Below, piece by piece: positions 2,328 to 28,655 of a DNA stretch of 33,172 nt; position 1 is the stretch's first letter; every line of letters starts with the position of its first letter. Source of the DNA: Octopus sinensis (Eukaryota); assembly GCF_006345805.1 (NCBI RefSeq), contig NW_021832103.1:1-33172 (forward strand). The letters run 5' to 3'. Below the pieces are notes generated by a model, which had not been told where the DNA came from, did no database searches, and was given only the letters and a program-made list of their open reading frames with translations. Both the position numbers and the translations under genes were made by a program.

Positions 2328-2578
2328 ATACATTCATGTACATATACATACATATTTTTTAATATGGACATTCTGACTGAACGAACGTGAATCATTCCGA
2401 TTGCACGAGTCCATTTGAATGGAAGAAACGATTTGAATATTCCTATAAAAACGAGACTAAGCTCAGTTGAATTCGTGATGCTTCGGTTGTTAGATAAGTA
2501 TATTCTTCCCAAAGTTAAAATAAGATTAGATATACACTCCTTTTGTAGAGCTAGTCTATATTTTCTATATATAATAAA

Positions 2579-2818
2579 TAAATGCGCCCTTTTAAAACCT
2601 AGCCAGGCTCATGGGCCCGGTTTCCCGGTTTCAATGGCGTATGTGTTCCCAAGCCTGCCCATCGCAGCGTTACACAATTTTGCCAGTTGAGTGGACTGGA
2701 GCAACGTGCAATGAAGTGTTTTGCTCAAGAACACAACTCGTCGCCCGGTCCAGGAATCGAAACCACAATCTTGCGATCATGATGTTGACACCCTAACCAC
2801 TAAGCCACGCGCTTCCAC
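2579..2818 (-). mobile_element. tRNA-derived SINE, family C head, tail type 2
   Basis: Same head and CORE-like block as 1995-2327 (ggcttagtggttagggtg...gtttcgattcctggaccgggc...gttcttgagcaaaacacttca) but a different 3' tail. Confidence 0.85.
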
Positions 2819-2849
2819 TATATTTTCTATATAGTTTTATGCATTCCTC

Positions 2850-4200
2850 TGCTTAATTAGTTTCCAGTATAATGAGGATTAATAGATAGTGTAATTAACC
2901 TATAGGTTATTAAGCTAATTACTGTTATTCTAGGACCAAAGTGTCATTATTGATCAATTTGATAATGTGCTAATATAACGAACGATGTGTTGATAGTTTT
3001 AATCACATGACTCGTACCGTTGGCAATGGATCACCAAATCATTGAAGATATGCCTACACAGTCTGTTGACCTACATGAAATAGTGGTCAAATTTTCTACA
3101 AAACCAATTGTAGTAATAAAAAATTATTCAACCTGATCGGGTAGATTAGGTCGGATAATTAGTTATCTCGGCAGGCAAGATAATCCAGATTATAATCACG
3201 CTGGGTTAATTAATAATAAACAGAATTACGCTATAAGTTAACTGCCACTTCTAAATTACCCGTGGAAGCATGTAATTTGAATCATACGCGCAGTAATTAG
3301 ATCGAATAGTCTATAATCTATTAATTAGTTAGGGTAAATATCCGATAAGATAACATAACCAGATAAATTATTTCAGCTAATTATATGGTAGAATTATGTC
3401 ATTGCCTAATTATTCAAGGCAATTAGCCGTAATCTGAATCTTAGGTCGACTAGTGAAAACTGTTAATTATTTTCAGTAAATAGCAATAGCGAGCTGGAAT
3501 AGCGCTGCCGATGTTATGAACAGATTAAAAACAAACGGGGCCTGCAGCTATGAGATACTTTTTTTAAGCAGGCTGGCTAATAATTAACACATGATCCTAT
3601 TATACTTTCACAGACATTCCTGTTCACGAATTCCTCTTTTACCACAATCACTGCAATCAGGTTTTTCTGTGCTGTATCTACTTATCTTCACTGCTTCTGT
3701 TAAATTTAACCAATTCGTCTTTGGTGAAATTTAAGCCGTGCTAAACTATGAACTCACGTTCCTTTCTATTCAGGAAAAAAAAACAACAAAAAAAAAAACA
3801 TTCGTAGTGATGGCGATAGAGGCAGCTGTGTAGAAGGTGACGACAAATTTCTATTTTTCCAATTAACCAATTGAGAATCAAGCACGTGTAATTAAGGTGG
3901 GATTAAATAATAATCACAAATAACTTAAGGATTAAATAATTATTGAGGATTAAGTTAGTCACATAATTATAGTGTGTTTTAATCCAAGTACTTTTTGCTC
4001 ATGAGTCACGTAATTAGCTTCTGGTATAATGAGGATTAATAGATCAACTAATTAATTGATCACTAAGCTATTAGTGTAATATACCGAGAGATTATTAGGC
4101 TAATTAGTGTTATTCTCGGATTAAAGATTCGTTATTCGTATATATTGGTAATATGCCAACATGGCGACTGGTGAGTCGATAGTTCTTATCTCATAATTAC
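2850..4200. promoter_or_regulatory. Candidate homeodomain-site cluster / enhancer (K50 Otx-type plus TAATTA sites)
   Basis: 18 TAATTA and 8 GGATTA/TAATCC counted by eye, 6 of the latter in 3900-4123. Also CACGTG (3883-3888) and TGAGTCA (4002-4008). No SINE or microsatellite interrupts the island. Confidence 0.5.
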
Positions 4201-4239
4201 TACATTTGGCAACGGATCACCGGGCCATGGAAGGAATGC

Positions 4240-4465
4240 TCTTTACTCTCTTTTACTCTTTTACTTGTTTCAGTCATTTGTCTGTGGCCATGCTGGAGCA
4301 CCGCCTTCAGTCGAGCACGTCGACCTCAGGACTTATTCTTTGTAAGCCTAGTACTTATTCTATCGGTCTCTTTTGCCGAACTGCTAAGTTACGGGGACGT
4401 AAACACACCAGCATCGGTCGTCAAGTGATGCTGGGGGGGGGACAAACACAGACATACAAACATAT

Positions 4466-4516
<51 letters not shown>

Positions 4517-4675
4517 TACGACGGGCTTCTTTCAGTTTCCGTCTACCAAATCCACTCACAAGGCTTTGGTCGGCCCGAGGCTATAGTAGAAGACACTTGC
4601 CCAAGGTGCCACGCAGTGGGACTGAACCCGGAACCATGTGGTTGGTAAACAAACTACTTACCACACAGCCACTCT
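4240..4675 (-). mobile_element. tRNA-derived SINE, family B, full length
   Basis: Minus strand: gagtggctgtgtggtaag (A box), gggttcagtccc (B box), ccttgggcaagtgtctt (CORE-like), internal (TA/TG)n, and a (GAGTAAAA)n-like tail. Confidence 0.93.
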
Positions 4676-4984
4676 CTACACAGCTTCTTGAACTATTAGA
4701 AATATCAACCAAATCTCCCTTAAATGTCATCATAACTTATAAAAAAGGACCCACATTGGAATAATGTGGTCTTGGATAAACTAAATCTGAAAATACAAAC
4801 AAATCTTAGAAGGACACGATAGGATATTTTATTAAATATTTGCCCTATCAAGATTTACCAAAGATTAAACAACAGCAATAACAGTAACAACAACTGCAAC
4901 AAGACTACTACTTTTACAAATAACCCTCAAAGGTTTCTGTCCACTAATTCTTCACTGAGAACCTCTAACATCCAAAAATGCTCC

Positions 4985-6914: not shown

Positions 6915-7085
6915 GGCGCAGGAGTGGCTGTGTGGTAATTAGCTTGCTAACTAACCACATGGTTCCAGGTTCAGTCCCACTGCGTGGCATCTTGGGCAAG
7001 TGTCTTCTGCTATAGCCCTGGGCCGACCAATGCCTTGTGAGTGGATTTCGTAGACGGAAACTGAAAGAAGCCTGTCGTATATATG

Positions 7086-7118
<33 letters not shown>

Positions 7119-8113
7119 TTGTCCCCCTAACATTGCTTGACAAGCGATGCTGGTGTGTTTACGTCCCCGTAACTTAGCGGTTCGGCAAAAGAGACCGATA
7201 GGATAAGTACTGGGCTTACAAAGAATAAGTCTTGGGGGGTCGATTTTCTCGACTAAAATGCGGTGCTCCAGCATGGCCGCAGTCAAATGACTGAAACAAG
7301 TAAAAGAGTAAAAAGTGTAAAAGAGAGTAGCTTGCTAACCAACCACATGGTTCCTGGTTCAGTCCCACTGCGTGGCATCTTGGGCAAGTGTCTTCTGCTA
7401 TAGCCCTGGGCCGACCAATGCCTTGTGAGTGGATTTGGTAGACGGAAACTGAAAGAAGCCTGTCGTATATATGTATATATATATGTGTGTGTGTTTGTGT
7501 GTCTGTGTTTGTCCCCCTAACATTGCTTGACAAGCGATGCTGGTGTGTTTACGCCCCCGTCACTTAGCGGTTCGGCAAAAGAGACCGATAGAATAAGTAC
7601 TGGGCTTACAAAAGAATAAGTCCCGGGGTCGATTTGCTCGACTAAAGGCGGTGCTCCAGCATGGCCGCAGTCAAATGACTGAAACAAGTAAAAGAGTAAA
7701 AAGTGTAAAAGAGAGTAGCTTGCTAACCAACCACATGGTTCCTGGTTCAGTCCCACTGCGTGGCATCTTGGGCAAGCGTCTTCTGCTATAGCCCTGGGCC
7801 GACCAATGCCTTGTGAGTTGATTTGGTAGACGGAAACTGAAAGAAGCCTGTCGTATATATGTATATATATTTATGTATGTGTGTTTGTGTGTCTGTGTTT
7901 GTCCCCCTAGCATTGCTTGACAACCGATGCTGGTGTGTTTACGTCCCCGTAACTTAGCGGTTCGGCAAAAGAGACCGATAGAATAAGTACTGGGCTTATA
8001 AAAGAATAAGTCTTGGGGGGTCGATTTGCTCGACTAAAATGCGGTGCTCCAGCATGGTCGCAGTCAAATGACTGAAAACAAGTAAAAGAGTAAAAGAGAG
8101 TAAAAAAGAGAGT
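6915..8113 (+). mobile_element. Head-to-tail trimer of family B SINE (units at 6915, 7326, 7714)
   Basis: Three units of about 390-410 bp. Units 2 and 3 lack the first ~25 nt and begin at the identical junction gagtaaaaagtgtaaaagag|agtagcttgctaacc. Confidence 0.93.
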
Positions 8114-8454
8114 AAGTCTTACTCCAATCCCTAAAAAATACAGGATGCTTTTGTATATTGACGGGTCTGTTCCATGGCGACCGATTTGCAATAAGCAGCA
8201 ACTATCGCTACTGCTGTTGCTGCTGGTGTCGCATAAATTGCACCTCCTGCTGCTGTTGCTGTTGTCGCTTGGATTGCTGGTGCTTCTGCTGCTAAAGTTG
8301 TCTCTGTAGCTGCTGCTGCCTTTGGCTCGGTTCCCCCACACAAAAAAAAAAAAAAAAAAAAACACAGCGCACAATTTCGTACCCAGTGACCACAAAGATT
8401 TCCATGGCATCTGCATTCACTTAGTAATCAGTTTTTAACGTTTACATCATCTCT

Positions 8455-11500: not shown

Positions 11501-11959
11501 TTATGTATATACATATTCACGTGTATATAGCTTATATAGCTATATAAGTACACACACATACACACACACGTATACACACGCGCGCACACATACAGACACA
11601 CACACGAACACAAGCACATAGCTACGTTCGCTTATTTTCCCTTCCTTCCACATCTAACACAACATAGTTCATTCCAATATTAACTGTGTCACTACTGAGA
11701 CAAGCGCTTTAAGTATTGGCAAATCCTTTTATTTATGGGCCAGTTCTTTGTTTTAGCAGAAAAAAAATACGTTCAACAGCGGAAAAGACCTAATTGACAT
11801 TATTAAAACGAAATGGAGTTGGTAACCAGTTGGAAGTGAATGAGAAATGAAGCTGAAATAGCGAAATACTGCAAAAGTTATCTGGTGCTTTCGTATTAGC
11901 ATATGTTGCGGCGACAGTGAAATTACTATATTTGATGTCACACAATAGTGTTATGTTAT

Positions 11960-12162
11960 AACGTGTGTATATCTGTTTGTACGTGTGTGTGTGTGTGTGT
12001 AAGTGTATGTGTGTGTATGTGTGTGTATGTGTGTATGTGTGTGTATGTGTGTGTGTGTGTGATTGTTTGATGCCGTAATTTATATATATATATATATAAA
12101 TATCATATATATATATATTATCATACCTATACATACATACATACATACATATATATATATAT

Positions 12163-12205
<43 letters not shown>

Positions 12206-12339
12206 TATATTATACAATATATATATGTATATAGTAGCTTTTAATTTATGCAGGCGTTTAGGCACAAAAGCTGCGTACTATGTATATACGTTATTACGTG
12301 TATATATAATATATATATACATATATATATATATATTAT

Positions 12340-12413
<74 letters not shown>

Positions 12414-12585
12414 TACATACATACATATACATATATATACCATACATACACACATATATGTATATACATACATATACATATACATACATATAATATATAT
12501 ATATGTATGTGTGTGTATGAATACATATAAGGTTGTAGAGATTATATATATATATATCTATATATTCTATATATATAGATATATT

Positions 12586-12618
<33 letters not shown>

Positions 12619-12620
12619 AC
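11960..12620. repeat. (TG)n/(TA)n/(CATA)n low-complexity tract
   Basis: Direct read. Confidence 0.9.
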
Positions 12621-12879
12621 ATACAACACATAAGTATGCGTTATGTGATATGTTATAGGGGTGCGTGTATATAGTTGTGTGAGTATGTATGCGAGCTGGT
12701 GTTCCAGTTGTAGGATGTGTTTGTGTGTATGTATATGAGCATGTATTTGTGAGTGCCGTTGTTGTGTATAGATATGTGGGTATTTAATGCTGACCCATAG
12801 GGAAAATGTTACAATATGTGTGTGAAGGTCATTGCGTCTTTGTGCGTGCATGCGTGTGTGTTTGTGAGTGCCTAGCTAT

Positions 12880-13183
12880 ACGTACGTATGTATGTATGTA
12901 TGTATGTATGTATGTATGTATGTATGTATGTTATGTATGTATGTATGTATGTATGTTTGTATGTATGTATATATGTTTGTATGTATGTATGTATATATGT
13001 ATGTATGTATTTCTGTATGTAAGTATGTATGTATGTATGTATGTATGTATGTGTATGTATGTATGTATGTATGTATGTGTGTATATATGTTTGTATGTAT
13101 GTATGTATATATGTATGTATGTATTTCTGTATGTAAGTATGTATGTATGTATGTATGTATGTATGTGTATGTATGTATGTATG

Positions 13184-13216
<33 letters not shown>

Positions 13217-13489
13217 GTGTGTGTATGTATGTATGTATGTATGTATGTATGTATGTATGTATGTGTGTGTGTATGTATGTATGTATGTATGTGTGTATAT
13301 ATGTTTGTATGTATGTATGTATGTATGTATGTATTTCTGTATGTAAGTATGTATGTATGTATGTATGTATGTGTATGTATGTATGTATGTATATATGTAT
13401 GTATGTATGTTTGTATGTGTGTGTGTATGTATGTATGTATGTATGTATGTATGTATGTATGTATGTATGTATGTATGTTTGTATGTATG

Positions 13490-13523
<34 letters not shown>

Positions 13524-13560
13524 TGTATGTATGTATGTATGTATGTATGTATGTATATGT
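12880..13560. repeat. ~680 bp (TATG)n microsatellite with higher-order variant repeats
   Basis: Direct read; it explains ORFs 12806-13573, 12868-13587 and 12872-13564. Confidence 0.96.
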
Positions 13561-24572: not shown

Positions 24573-24955
24573 CTAGCAGTATCGCCCGGCGTTGCTCAGG
24601 TTTGTAAGGGAAATAACTATAAAGCATTTTTAGAGAGTTACAGCCAAAAAATAGCAAAAAATGGGAAAAAAATGATGGTAAATTTTTTTTTTAATTAAAA
24701 AAGGTGGAGTTACGTCCCCTAGACAGTTTGTGGTTTGTGTTTCTGATTCTCGACCCCATGTCGAATTTATCGATTTTGTTCAGAACTGGGGGAACTTTTC
24801 AAAATTTTCGCTGCGTTAGTTTTGAATTATGACATTGGGGTATGTGTGTGTCAAGTTTCATCAGAATCGGTTGAAAGCCGTGGTCAGGGTGAGGGTACAA
24901 GCAAACAGACACACAGAAACACGCACAGACAAACTGCCGTTTATATAGAGAGAGA
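24573..24955 (-). mobile_element. Non-autonomous Helitron
   Basis: The minus strand starts A|TCtctctctatataaacggcagtttgtctgtg and ends cctgagcaacgccgggcgatactg CTAG|T. This gives the canonical TC...CTAG termini, an A/T insertion site, no TSD and an imperfect subterminal hairpin. Confidence 0.85.
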
Positions 24956-24974
24956 TGTATTTATATATATATAT

Positions 24975-25340
24975 TTTCGCTGTGGCAGGGACTGTCTAAC
25001 ACAGTTCTTACACCACATTGAAGATATACTTAAAGCCTTAGGAACAGGTTCGAACTCTGATGTCATATATCTTAGCTTCAGTAAAGTACTCTCAAAATTG
25101 GCAAATGTTGGAATCCGTGGAAAACTTCTACACTGGATTAAGTATTTCCTGGCGAATAGAACACAACATGTTGTGGTCGATGGAATCCACTCAAGCCCAG
25201 CAAAAGTCCCAAGTGGTGTCCCTCAGGGGACTGTCTTGGGTCCGCTCCTCTATATAATTTACATAAATGACCTTTCCAGCGTCGTAAATCACTGCAAAGT
25301 GAATATATTTGCTGATGACACTAAGCTCCAGCAAATCATC
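24975..25340 (+). pseudogene. Reverse transcriptase fragment of a CR1/L2-group LINE
   Basis: FRCGRDCLTQ...DVIYLSFSK...GIRGKLLHWIKYFLANRTQHVVVDG..SS...V.SGVPQGTVLGPLLYIIYINDL...FADDTKL: classic non-LTR RT motifs. The AFDKV.H segment is deleted. Confidence 0.93.
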
Positions 25341-25387
25341 AAAAAAAAAAAAAAAGAATCTCAGTTAGGCGCAGGATGGGGTTGTGT

Positions 25388-25778
25388 GTAAGTAGCTTAC
25401 TAACCAACCACATGGTTCCGGGTTCAGTCCCACTGCGTGGCATCTTGGGTCAAGTGTCCTTCTTATGCTATAGCCCCGGGCCGACCAATGCCTTGTGAGT
25501 GGATTTGGTAGACGGAAACTGAAAGAAGCCTGTCGTATATATGTATATATATTAAGTTGTGTGTATATGTTTGTGTGTCTGTGTTTGTCCCCCTAAAATT
25601 GCTTGACAACCGATGCTGGTGTGTTTACGTCCCCGTCACTTAGTGGTTCGGCAAAAGAGACCGATAAAATAAGTACTGGGCTTACAAAGAATAAGTCCCG
25701 GGGTTCGATTTGCTCGACTAAAGGCGGTGCTCCAGCATGGCTGCAGTCAAATGACTGAAACAAGTAAAAGAGAGAGAG
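25388..25778 (+). mobile_element. Family B SINE, full length
   Basis: Head ggcgcagga..., CORE-like block and tail aagtaaaagagagagag. Shares diagnostic variants with unit 2 of the 6915-8113 trimer. Confidence 0.92.
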
Positions 25779-27657: not shown

Positions 27658-28655
27658 GGCGGCGAGCTGGCAGAATCGTTAGCACTCCGGGCGAAATGCG
27701 TAGCCGTATTTCGTATGTCTTTACGTTCTGAGTTCAAATTCCGCCGAGGTCGACTTTGCCTTTCATCCTTTCGGGGTCGATTAAATAAGTACCAGTTACG
27801 CACTGGGGTCGATGTAATCGATGTAATCGACTTAATCCGTTTGTCTGTCCTTGTTTGTCCCCTCTGTGTTTAGCCCCTTGTGGGGAGTAAAGAAATAGGT
27901 ATTTCGTCTGCTGCTACGTTCTGAGTTCAAATTCCGCCGAGGTCGACTTTGCCTTTCATCCTATCGGGGTCGATAAATTAAGTACCATTTACGCACTGGG
28001 GTTGATGTAATCGACTTAATCCCTTTGTCTGTCCTTGTTTGTCCCCTCTGTGTTTAGCCCCTTGTGGGTAGTAAAGAAATAGGTATTTTGTATGTCTTTA
28101 CGTTCTGAGTTCAAATTCCGCCGAGGTCGACTTTGCCTTTCATCCTTTCGGGGTCGATTAAATAAGTACAGTACGCACTGGGGTCGATATAATCGACTTT
28201 AATCCATTTGTATGTCCTTGTTTGGTCCTCTCTGTGTTTAGCCCCTTGTGGGTAGTAAAGAAATAGGTAGTCGTCTGTTTTACGTTAGAGTTCAAATTCC
28301 GCCAAGGTCGACTTTGCCTTTCCTCTTTCGAGGTTGATAAATTAAGTACCAGTTACGCACTGGGGTCGATGTAATCGATGTAATCGACTTAATCCCTTTG
28401 TCTGTCCTTGTTTGTCCCCTCTGTGTTTAGCCCCTTGTGGGAAATAAAGAAATAAGAAACGTTTGCACGCTGGGCGAAATGCTAAGCGGTATTTCGTCTG
28501 CCGTTACGTTCTGAGTTCAAATTCCGCCGAGGTCGACTTTGCCTCTCATCCTTTCCGGGTCGATAAATTAAGTACCAGTTGCGTACTGGGGTCGATCTAA
28601 TCGTCTGGCCCTCTCCCACCAAATTTCGCGCCTTGTGCCTAAAGTAGAAAAGAAT
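27658..28655 (+). mobile_element. Family A SINE with five internal tandem units
   Basis: One head and one terminal tail. The unit marker tacgtt.tgagttcaaattccgcc occurs at 27722, 27915, 28099, 28281 and 28505. Probable TSD atatt(t/c)tatact at 27640-27651 and 28654-28665. Confidence 0.93.

What the first reader, a model, noticed from the sequence alone, without database searches (positions are those of the whole stretch)
2850..4200. Dense homeodomain-site island: candidate Otx/K50-type enhancer
Seen: 18 TAATTA sites (2854, 2892, 2916, 3156, 3207, 3294, 3322, 3378, 3407, 3464, 3581, 3889, 3937, 3964, 4011, 4049, 4101, 4194). Rough expectation at about 67% AT is ~2. Seen: 8 perfect GGATTA/TAATCC (2876, 3181, 3900, 3929, 3947, 3980, 4033, 4118), six of them in 224 bp where ~0.15 is expected. 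An E-box CACGTG (3883) and an AP-1/Maf-like TGAGTCA (4002) sit in that core. The 1.35 kb island has no SINE or microsatellite insertion, unlike its surroundings. Established: TAATCC is the K50 homeodomain motif (Otx/Crx/Pitx/Gsc), and homotypic clusters with a bZIP site typify photoreceptor enhancers in other animals. Inference: a cephalopod eye or neural cis-regulatory module.
Basis: partly seen in the sequence, partly recalled or inferred. Interest (0 to 1): 0.7.

Follow-up and report, generated by a model that had tools for sequence, protein, structure and literature searches.

The report
Dense homeodomain-site cluster in octopus DNA
A 1.4-kb stretch of non-coding octopus DNA holds about eight times more exact homeodomain-protein binding motifs than chance allows and is not a simple repeat, so it is a credible candidate gene switch, but whether it is unique, conserved or active could not be tested here.

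Summary
All 18 TAATTA and 8 GGATTA/TAATCC sites are at the stated coordinates. Dinucleotide shuffles of the island give 2.2±1.5 and 1.1±1.0. No other 1.4-kb stretch of the window, or of 20 kb of Octopus bimaculoides DNA, has more than 6 TAATTA.

The enrichment is at the level of the motif. Site flanks are no more alike than random positions, there is no tandem periodicity in the sequence, and one-mismatch variants show little excess.

New anatomy:
- The island is bounded by a ~230-bp direct repeat (2854-3082 and 4011-4241 plus 4677-4703, about 75% identical). A SINE interrupts the second copy.
- A 290-bp stretch without TAAT cores (3590-3880) splits a TAATTA-rich left block from a mixed TAATCC/TAATTA right core.
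- There are no terminal inverted repeats, no LTR hallmarks, no long ORF and no Rfam match.

My best reading is an array of homeodomain-type protein-binding sites, most likely a host cis-regulatory module (about 0.4). A mobile or duplicated element carrying such an array is the main rival (about 0.3).

The specific Otx/photoreceptor reading is not supported. TAATTA outnumbers TAATCC, the E-box and AP-1 sites are single chance-level hits, and no gene was found nearby. Copy number, conservation and chromatin state could not be tested with these tools.

The parts
2854..4241 (.). TAAT-dense island. It continues for about 27 bp at 4677-4703, beyond the SINE insertion. It holds 18 TAATTA, 8 GGATTA/TAATCC and 81 TAAT cores.
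   Evidence: TAAT cores run at 6-12 per 100 bp inside and 0-2 per 100 bp in flanks of similar AT content.
2854..3082 (+). Direct repeat copy A, at the left edge of the island. It carries TAATTA at 2854, 2892 and 2916, and GGATTA at 2876.
   Evidence: It is about 75% identical to copy B overall, and the first 34 bp are 91% identical.
4011..4241 (+). Direct repeat copy B, at the right edge of the island. It has a 28-bp insertion relative to A. A SINE interrupts it at 4242, and homology resumes at about 4677-4703.
3140..3590 (.). Left block: 8 TAATTA, 1 TAATCC and many TAATCT/TAATAG variants. The TAATTA positions fall near a lattice of about 28.5 bp.
   Evidence: Rayleigh R 0.91, p 0.013 with the period search included, but the block limits were chosen after seeing the data.
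3590..3880 (.). Spacer with no TAAT core. It is T/C-rich, has an A-run at 3774-3800, and is open in several reading frames only because it lacks stop triplets.
   Evidence: Its translations had no protein homologues.
3883..4125 (.). Right core: 6 GGATTA/TAATCC (5 in one orientation) interleaved with 6 TAATTA, plus a single CACGTG (3883) and a single TGAGTCA (4002).
   Evidence: GGATTAA occurs 7 times against 0.35 expected, and GAGGATTA 3 times against 0.05.
2572..2817 (-). tRNA-derived SINE inserted 20 bp left of the island. It has a perfect 16-bp target-site duplication, CTATATTTTCTATATA, at 2556-2571 and 2818-2833.
   Evidence: family D6; partial copies elsewhere in the window. A reverse-complement tRNA-like A and B box is visible in the sequence.
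4242..4676 (+). SINE with an internal (AT)n microsatellite, inserted into repeat copy B.
   Evidence: at least 5 copies of 83-88% identity in the window; related copies in O. bimaculoides.

Best explanation
The island is an array of independent, exact homeodomain-type binding sites. A Q50-type TAATTA(G) set runs throughout, and a K50-type TTAATCC set is concentrated in the right 250 bp.

The array was shaped by selection on the hexamers themselves, not by copying of a longer unit. An internal duplication of about 230 bp enlarged it. Most likely it is a host cis-regulatory module, either an enhancer or a silencer, that recruits several homeodomain proteins at once. In that model the high site density gives cooperative or threshold-type occupancy.

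Shown: the motif excess, its independence from repeats, and the anatomy of the island. Inferred: that proteins bind these sites, which proteins they are, and that binding regulates a gene.
For: - Motif excess against shuffles and against real octopus DNA. A Poisson tail at the measured background density of 0.5 per kb gives about 1e-19 per 1.4-kb window.
- Flanks of the 18 sites are no more alike than random island positions: 7.81 against 7.92+-0.24 matches out of 24.
- There is no sequence autocorrelation at any lag from 1 to 120. The sites are therefore not copies of a longer unit or a decayed minisatellite.
- Only the exact hexamers are strongly enriched. One-mismatch variants are at or near background: 29 against 24.8+-4.4, and 22 against 14.6+-3.3 with a motif-removed null. 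This is less decay than the 25% divergence of the internal repeat would predict for a neutral fossil.
- Flank preference matches known homeodomain preferences: TAATTAG/CTAATTA at 10 of 18 sites (p 0.024), and RGGATTAA at 5 of 8 K50 sites.
- No ORF, RNA family, terminal inverted repeat or second copy in 33 kb plus 20 kb.
- Homeodomain-motif-rich elements of about 1 kb with regulatory effect are reported in cephalopods (PMC13652810).
Against: - There is no conservation, chromatin or expression evidence, and no target gene. No exon was detected within the window.
- The island's edges coincide with a pair of direct repeats, as in an inserted element.
- Motif columns are not significantly better conserved than other columns between the two repeat copies: 80.6% against 74.1%, p 0.52.
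- The shortfall of one-mismatch relics is only about 2 sigma from neutral decay.
- Eighteen perfect palindromic sites per 1.4 kb is denser than typical characterised enhancers.
Confidence: 0.4

Rival explanations
1. The island is a non-autonomous mobile or duplicated element of about 1.4 kb with ~230-bp terminal direct repeats (LTR-like, TRIM/LARD-like, or a 1.2-mer of a ~1157-bp unit). Its family consensus carries the TAAT-site array. The sites would be a property of a repeat family, serving the element or host factors that it exploits, and not of this locus.
For: - Direct repeats sit exactly at the two ends of the TAAT-dense region.
- TAAT density drops sharply at both edges.
- The window is about 46% self-similar repeats, so the prior for a mobile-element origin is high.
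- SINEs have inserted into and next to the island, so the sequence is old.
Against: - No TG...CA termini, primer-binding site, polypurine tract or target-site duplication (inspection).
- No terminal inverted repeats, no ORF and no hammerhead or other RNA family.
- No second copy in the 33-kb window or in 20 kb of O. bimaculoides. This excludes only very high copy numbers, roughly above 1e4-1e5.
- No protein-database trace of its reading frames.
Confidence: 0.3
2. One reading: an Otx/Crx/Pitx-type (K50) photoreceptor or neural enhancer with a bZIP co-factor site.
For: - Six TTAATCC-type sites in 224 bp against 0.18 expected.
- The extended form RGGATTAA matches K50 consensus sequences (background knowledge of K50 specificity, e.g. 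PMC6177261 and PMC10645426).
Against: - TAATTA, a Q50-type site, is the dominant motif over the whole island.
- Three of the K50 sites share extended flanks, GGATTAAATAAT or TGAGGATTAA, so they partly reflect micro-duplication.
- CACGTG and TGAGTCA are single, chance-level hits.
- No eye or neural gene, or any gene, was found in the window.
Confidence: 0.1
3. The island is a structural AT-rich element, such as a scaffold/matrix attachment region or an array for AT-hook, ARID or SATB/Dve-type proteins, which also recognise ATTA/TAAT-rich DNA. It would act on chromatin architecture and not as a classical enhancer.
For: - ATTA/TAAT richness.
- Several near-matches (2 mismatches) to the SATB1 consensus TATTAGTAATAA (consensus from PMC2367706).
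- Homeobox-type motifs are reported as enriched at cephalopod loop anchors (PMC13652810).
Against: - ATC-context (G-free or C-free) runs are not significantly enriched: 408 against 305+-70 bases.
- AT content (66.6%) equals that of the flanks.
- The enrichment is specific to exact hexamers, not to general AT-richness.
Confidence: 0.1
4. The island is a neutral by-product: a decayed ~29-bp minisatellite, or cryptic simplicity from micro-duplications.
For: - TAATTA positions 3156-3581 fall near a lattice of about 28.5 bp.
- Small 15-16-bp two-copy repeats and a duplicated GGATTAAATAAT are present.
Against: - No sequence autocorrelation at lag 28-29 or its multiples.
- Flanks are at background similarity.
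- A decay level that leaves 18 perfect hexamers would leave unit flanks still clearly alike, and about as many one-mismatch relics as perfect sites. Neither is seen.
Confidence: 0.05

Closest known systems
Homotypic clusters of transcription-factor binding sites in developmental enhancers (for example the Bicoid K50 site clusters of Drosophila gap-gene enhancers)
   Same: Many copies of one short motif within about 0.2-1.5 kb, heterogeneous flanks, both orientations, and strong and variant sites mixed. The right core has 6 K50 sites in 224 bp.
   Different: - Density and exactness are unusually high: 18 perfect palindromic TAATTA.
- Two motif classes, Q50 and K50, are combined.
- No partner-factor motifs are enriched.
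- No target gene, conservation or activity data.
- The cluster is bounded by direct repeats.
CRX/OTX2-bound photoreceptor cis-regulatory modules
   Same: TAATCC-type sites are present alongside Q50-type (RAX/VSX-like TAATTAG/TAATTAGC) sites.
   Different: - Those modules usually have 1-3 K50 sites in about 100-300 bp, with NRL/MAF and other partner sites.
- Here partner sites are at chance level and Q50 sites dominate.
- No link to an eye gene.
Terminal-repeat non-autonomous retroelements (TRIM/LARD type)
   Same: About 1.4 kb, non-coding, with ~230-bp terminal direct repeats in the same orientation.
   Different: No TG...CA ends, primer-binding site, polypurine tract or target-site duplication, and no other copy seen. 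The repeats are 25% diverged.
The ~1-kb intronic Hox-motif-enriched element deleted in Euprymna berryi (PMC13652810)
   Same: A cephalopod non-coding element of about 1 kb, enriched for homeodomain-type motifs and proposed as regulatory.
   Different: It is in a different species and locus. That element has Hi-C, CRISPR and conservation support, and this one has none.

Membership tests
Homotypic TF-site cluster / candidate homeodomain-responsive CRM | Significant over-representation of one binding motif within about 1-2 kb | tested here: met
   TAATTA 18 against 2.24+-1.46; GGATTA 8 against 1.06. Real-DNA background maximum is 6.
Homotypic TF-site cluster / candidate homeodomain-responsive CRM | Sites are independent instances, not copies of a longer repeat | tested here: met
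   Flank similarity is at background and there is no autocorrelation. Exceptions are 3 TAATTA and 1 GGATTA shared by the two copies of the direct repeat, and 2-3 K50 sites with shared extended flanks.
Homotypic TF-site cluster / candidate homeodomain-responsive CRM | Evolutionary conservation of the block or its sites at the orthologous locus | not testable with these tools
   No cephalopod genome collection is searchable. Indirect routes failed. The paralogue comparison within the island was inconclusive.
Homotypic TF-site cluster / candidate homeodomain-responsive CRM | Open chromatin, TF occupancy or reporter activity | not testable with these tools
K50 (Otx/Crx/Pitx/Gsc/Bcd) target enhancer | Cluster of TAATCC sites | tested here: met
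   Six in 224 bp against 0.18 expected. GGATTAA occurs 7 times against 0.35 expected.
K50 (Otx/Crx/Pitx/Gsc/Bcd) target enhancer | K50 sites are the predominant homeodomain site class | tested here: not met
   18 TAATTA against 8 TAATCC overall. In the core the two classes are equal, 6 and 6.
K50 (Otx/Crx/Pitx/Gsc/Bcd) target enhancer | Enriched partner sites (bZIP/MARE, E-box) | tested here: not met
   There is one CACGTG and one TGAGTCA. Shuffles reach these counts in 8% and 12.5% of trials.
K50 (Otx/Crx/Pitx/Gsc/Bcd) target enhancer | Linked photoreceptor or neural target gene | tested here: inconclusive
   No exon or domain was found in the 33 kb apart from an RVT_1 fragment. Genes beyond the window are unknown.
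LTR retrotransposon / TRIM | Terminal direct repeats | tested here: met
   2854-3082 matches 4011-4241 plus 4677-4703 at about 75% identity.
LTR retrotransposon / TRIM | TG...CA repeat termini, primer-binding site, polypurine tract, 4-6-bp target-site duplication | tested here: not met
   The repeats start TAATTAG and end GAAATAG/GAAATAT. The sequence after copy A is TGGTCAAATTTTC, which does not resemble a tRNA 3' end. There is no purine tract before copy B and no flanking duplication.
LTR retrotransposon / TRIM | Multiple dispersed copies in the genome | not testable with these tools
   No copy in 33 kb plus 20 kb of octopus DNA. That sample can only exclude very high copy numbers.
DNA transposon / MITE | Terminal inverted repeats | tested here: not met
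   No terminal inverted repeat. The best inverted pairs are 13-25 nt and internal.
Minisatellite / tandem repeat | Head-to-tail sequence periodicity | tested here: not met
   TRF finds only 2-copy 15-16-bp repeats. Autocorrelation z is below 2.7 in the left block and shows no peak at 28-29.
S/MAR base-unpairing region | Clustered ATC-context (G-free or C-free) runs | tested here: inconclusive
   408 bases in runs of 20 or more, against 305+-70 in shuffles.

The most novel reading that the evidence does not exclude
The island is a self-contained 'homeodomain-site cassette'. It is a non-coding unit bounded by direct repeats that carries exact Q50 sites on a lattice of about 29 bp plus a K50 core. 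Such a unit has been duplicated or mobilised in octopod genomes, spreading homeodomain-responsive regulation. This would be a cephalopod example of binding-site arrays distributed by a new, non-canonical repeat type.
Probability: 0.12. Interest if true: 0.7.

Novelty: new member of a known kind. Interest (0 to 1): 0.4.

Why it matters
Very few cis-regulatory elements have been characterised in cephalopods. This is a compact, sharply bounded block whose only obvious information content is about 26 exact homeodomain sites. That makes it easy to test: binding assays with octopus Otx, Pitx or Gsc and with Q50 factors, ATAC or Hi-C overlap, and a CRISPR deletion like the one already done in Euprymna. 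If it is single-copy and conserved, it would be one of the clearest sequence-defined candidate enhancers in an octopus genome. If it is a repeat family, it would show how homeodomain-site arrays spread in a SINE-rich genome.

Tried and rejected
- **Metagenome scan.** I searched for the 20-mer conserved in both repeat copies. It gave one hit with unrelated flanks, which is chance.
- **Island reading frames as protein queries.** I searched the 5.8-billion-protein set with concatenated translations of every open stretch of the island and its left flank, hoping to catch ORFs called on related cephalopod contigs. There were no hits.
- **Exon hunt.** The aim was to reach orthologous loci through a neighbouring gene.
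  - Pfam on repeat-masked six-frame segments of the whole window found only an RVT_1 fragment at about 24.8-25.4 kb.
  - The protein database with segments from 1-12 kb found no hits.
- **RT-fragment search.** It located one O. bimaculoides locus. That confirmed the octopod origin of the SINEs but held no island copy. ENA contigs carrying related RT fragments are not octopus.
- **Other scans.** Rfam at the gathering and E-value thresholds, tRNA scan, inverted repeats and ORFs found nothing in the island.
- **Site architecture.** There are no paired-type P3 palindromes (TAATNNNATTA).
- **Hypotheses tested.**
  - Decayed minisatellite: rejected.
  - S/MAR ATC-run test: not significant.
  - Motif-specific constraint between the two repeat copies: not significant.
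- **Literature.** No paper combines octopus with TAATTA.

Full report
**Observation**

The sequence is as described. Every one of the 18 TAATTA and 8 GGATTA/TAATCC coordinates is exact. CACGTG at 3883 and TGAGTCA at 4002 are also present.

I took the SINE-free island as 2834-4241 (1408 bp, 33.4% GC) and ran 1000 dinucleotide-preserving shuffles of it:

| Motif | Observed | Shuffles |
|---|---|---|
| TAATTA | 18 | 2.24±1.46 (max 7) |
| GGATTA/TAATCC | 8 | 1.06±1.00 (max 5) |
| TAAT cores | 81 | 38±5.5 |
| GGATTA in the 246-bp core 3880-4125 | 6 | 0.18 |

The two single 'partner' motifs are not significant. One CACGTG or one TGAGTCA appears in 8% and 12.5% of shuffles.

Real DNA gives the same answer.
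- The rest of the window has 15 TAATTA in 31.8 kb.
- No other 1408-bp stretch has more than 6, and that stretch includes a (TAAT)n microsatellite.
- A 20-kb piece of Octopus bimaculoides has at most 4.
- At the measured background of 0.5 sites per kb, the Poisson tail for 18 or more is about 1e-19 per window.

**Source organism**

The window is about 46% self-similar repeats. These are SINEs and microsatellites.

The best named homologue of a LINE reverse-transcriptase fragment at 24.8-25.4 kb is an O. bimaculoides protein. The chromosome segment encoding that protein (L002, CM046601.1) carries the window's SINE families at 78-92% identity. The cephalopod (octopod) assignment is therefore supported.

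**Anatomy**

1. A tRNA-derived SINE (2572-2817) lies 20 bp left of the first TAATTA. It has a perfect 16-bp target-site duplication.
2. The island begins exactly where a ~230-bp direct repeat begins.
   - Copy A is 2854-3082. Copy B is 4011-4241.
   - They are about 75% identical. The first 34 bp are 91% identical, and copy B has a 28-bp insertion.
   - Copy B is interrupted at 4242 by a 435-bp SINE. Homology to copy A resumes for about 27 bp at 4677-4703.
3. TAAT-core density is 6-12 per 100 bp inside the island and 0-2 per 100 bp in flanks of similar AT content. There are two holes, at 2990-3110 and at 3590-3880.
4. The left block (3140-3590) is dominated by TAATTA. The right core (3883-4125) interleaves 6 K50-type and 6 TAATTA sites.
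5. The island has:
   - no terminal inverted repeats;
   - no ORF longer than 48 aa;
   - no tRNA or Rfam family;
   - no second copy in the window.

**What kind of enrichment it is**

The most over-represented words are:
- TAATTA;
- TAATTAG/CTAATTA (11 against 0.69 expected);
- GGATTAA (7 against 0.35 expected).

The ±12-bp flanks of the 18 TAATTA sites are no more similar to one another than random island positions are: 7.81 against 7.92±0.24 matches out of 24. The only outlier is the pair that belongs to the direct repeat. The sequence shows no autocorrelation at any lag up to 120.

Only the exact hexamers are strongly enriched.

| Null model | Motif | One-mismatch variants observed | Expected |
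|---|---|---|---|
| Shuffles of the island | TAATTA | 29 | 24.8±4.4 |
| Shuffles of the island | K50 | 18 | 18.4±4.1 |
| Motif-removed null | TAATTA | 22 | 14.6±3.3 |
| Motif-removed null | K50 | 16 | 12.9±3.2 |

A decayed minisatellite, or a neutral fossil as old as the 25%-diverged internal repeat, should behave differently. It should show about as many one-mismatch relics as perfect sites, and its unit flanks should still be recognisable. Neither is seen, so I reject that model.

The flank preferences agree with published homeodomain specificities. TAATTAG occurs at 10 of 18 sites (p 0.024), and RGGATTAA at 5 of 8. Taken together, this is what an array of protein-binding sites maintained or assembled by selection looks like.

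**Limits of the evidence**

- Between the two repeat copies, motif columns are 80.6% identical and other columns 74.1% (p 0.52). The only internal evolutionary comparison available is therefore inconclusive.
- Three TAATTA and one GGATTA are shared by descent between the two copies. Two or three K50 sites share extended flanks (GGATTAAATAAT, TGAGGATTAA). The number of independent sites is nearer 15 plus 5 than 18 plus 8. That is still far above chance.
- The TAATTA positions 3156-3581 fall near a lattice of about 28.5 bp (R 0.91, p 0.013 with the period search included). For all 18 sites p is 0.12, and I chose the block limits after seeing the data. I record this as unexplained and not as established.

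**Interpretation**

Best explanation, confidence about 0.4: a host cis-regulatory module built from a homotypic or bitypic cluster of homeodomain sites. It would be read by Q50-class factors across the island and by K50-class factors in the right core.

Main rival, about 0.3: a non-autonomous mobile or duplicated element. The TAAT-dense region is bounded by direct repeats, and the genome is repeat-rich. The canonical hallmarks that I could test are absent:
- no TG...CA termini;
- no primer-binding site or polypurine tract;
- no target-site duplication;
- no terminal inverted repeats.

Copy number could not be measured. The 53 kb of octopus DNA at hand can exclude only SINE-like abundance.

A structural reading (S/MAR or SATB/ARID-type) gets about 0.1. 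ATC-context runs are not significantly enriched.

It is a special case of the best explanation.
- The K50 sub-cluster is real.
- TAATTA dominates.
- The bZIP and E-box sites are at chance level.
- No gene of any kind was found in the window.

**Comparison with known systems**

It works like the homotypic site clusters of developmental enhancers, such as the Bicoid K50 clusters. It contains the site types seen in CRX/OTX modules. Membership of the photoreceptor class fails two tested features: K50 predominance and partner sites.

It resembles a TRIM/LARD-type element in having terminal direct repeats but fails the other tested hallmarks.

A cephalopod precedent for a ~1-kb homeodomain-motif-rich regulatory element exists in Euprymna (PMC13652810).

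**Verdict**

This is a real and statistically extreme feature of a known general kind: a homeodomain-site cluster and candidate cis-regulatory module. The anatomy found here, with bounding direct repeats and two blocks, leaves a repeat-family origin open.

Genome-wide copy number, synteny-based conservation and chromatin data would decide the matter.

Interest is 0.4.

Noticed in passing
window 3156-3581: Eight TAATTA sites fall near a lattice of about 28.4-28.7 bp, with gaps of 51, 87, 28, 56, 29, 57 and 117 bp. The underlying sequence has no 29-bp periodicity. Rayleigh p is 0.013 with the period search included, but the block limits were chosen after seeing the data, and p is 0.12 for all 18 sites.
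   Followed up: partly
window 2556-2833: A reverse-oriented tRNA-derived SINE (2572-2817) has a perfect 16-bp target-site duplication, CTATATTTTCTATATA. This shows a clean retroposition 20 bp from the island edge.
   Followed up: yes
window 6940-8110: Three head-to-tail copies of a 388-bp SINE unit (94% matches). This is the same family as the SINE inserted into the island's right repeat, so SINEs here also occur as tandem arrays.
   Followed up: no
window 27706-28454: Four tandem copies of a 184-bp unit (87% matches). Related single copies (85-92% identical) occur in O. bimaculoides locus L002 at 8171-8283, 11585-11698 and 11839-11898.
   Followed up: partly
window 24822-25391: A LINE reverse-transcriptase fragment (Pfam RVT_1, E 8e-08). 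The best named relative is O. bimaculoides LOC106868779 at 62% identity. It is the only protein-domain signal in the 33 kb.
   Followed up: yes
window 12081-13556: Very long microsatellites lie back to back: (TA)~270 at 12081-12610 and (GTAT)~170 at 12882-13556. They produce a strong local GC skew.
   Followed up: no
window 3020-3136 and 4206-4241: The two direct-repeat copies both start a short open frame at the same homologous point (MAMDHQIIEDM... and MATDHRAMEGM...). It is probably chance, because neither frame had a protein homologue.
   Followed up: partly
L003-L007 (ENA assemblies ERZ25073835, ERZ25073769, ERZ25073293, ERZ25069865, ERZ25073280): Long-read 'metagenome' assemblies in ENA contain large eukaryotic contigs, up to 2.3 Mb, with LINE, DDE-transposase and GPCR ORFs. 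They are not octopus, because they hold none of the octopus SINEs.
   Followed up: partly
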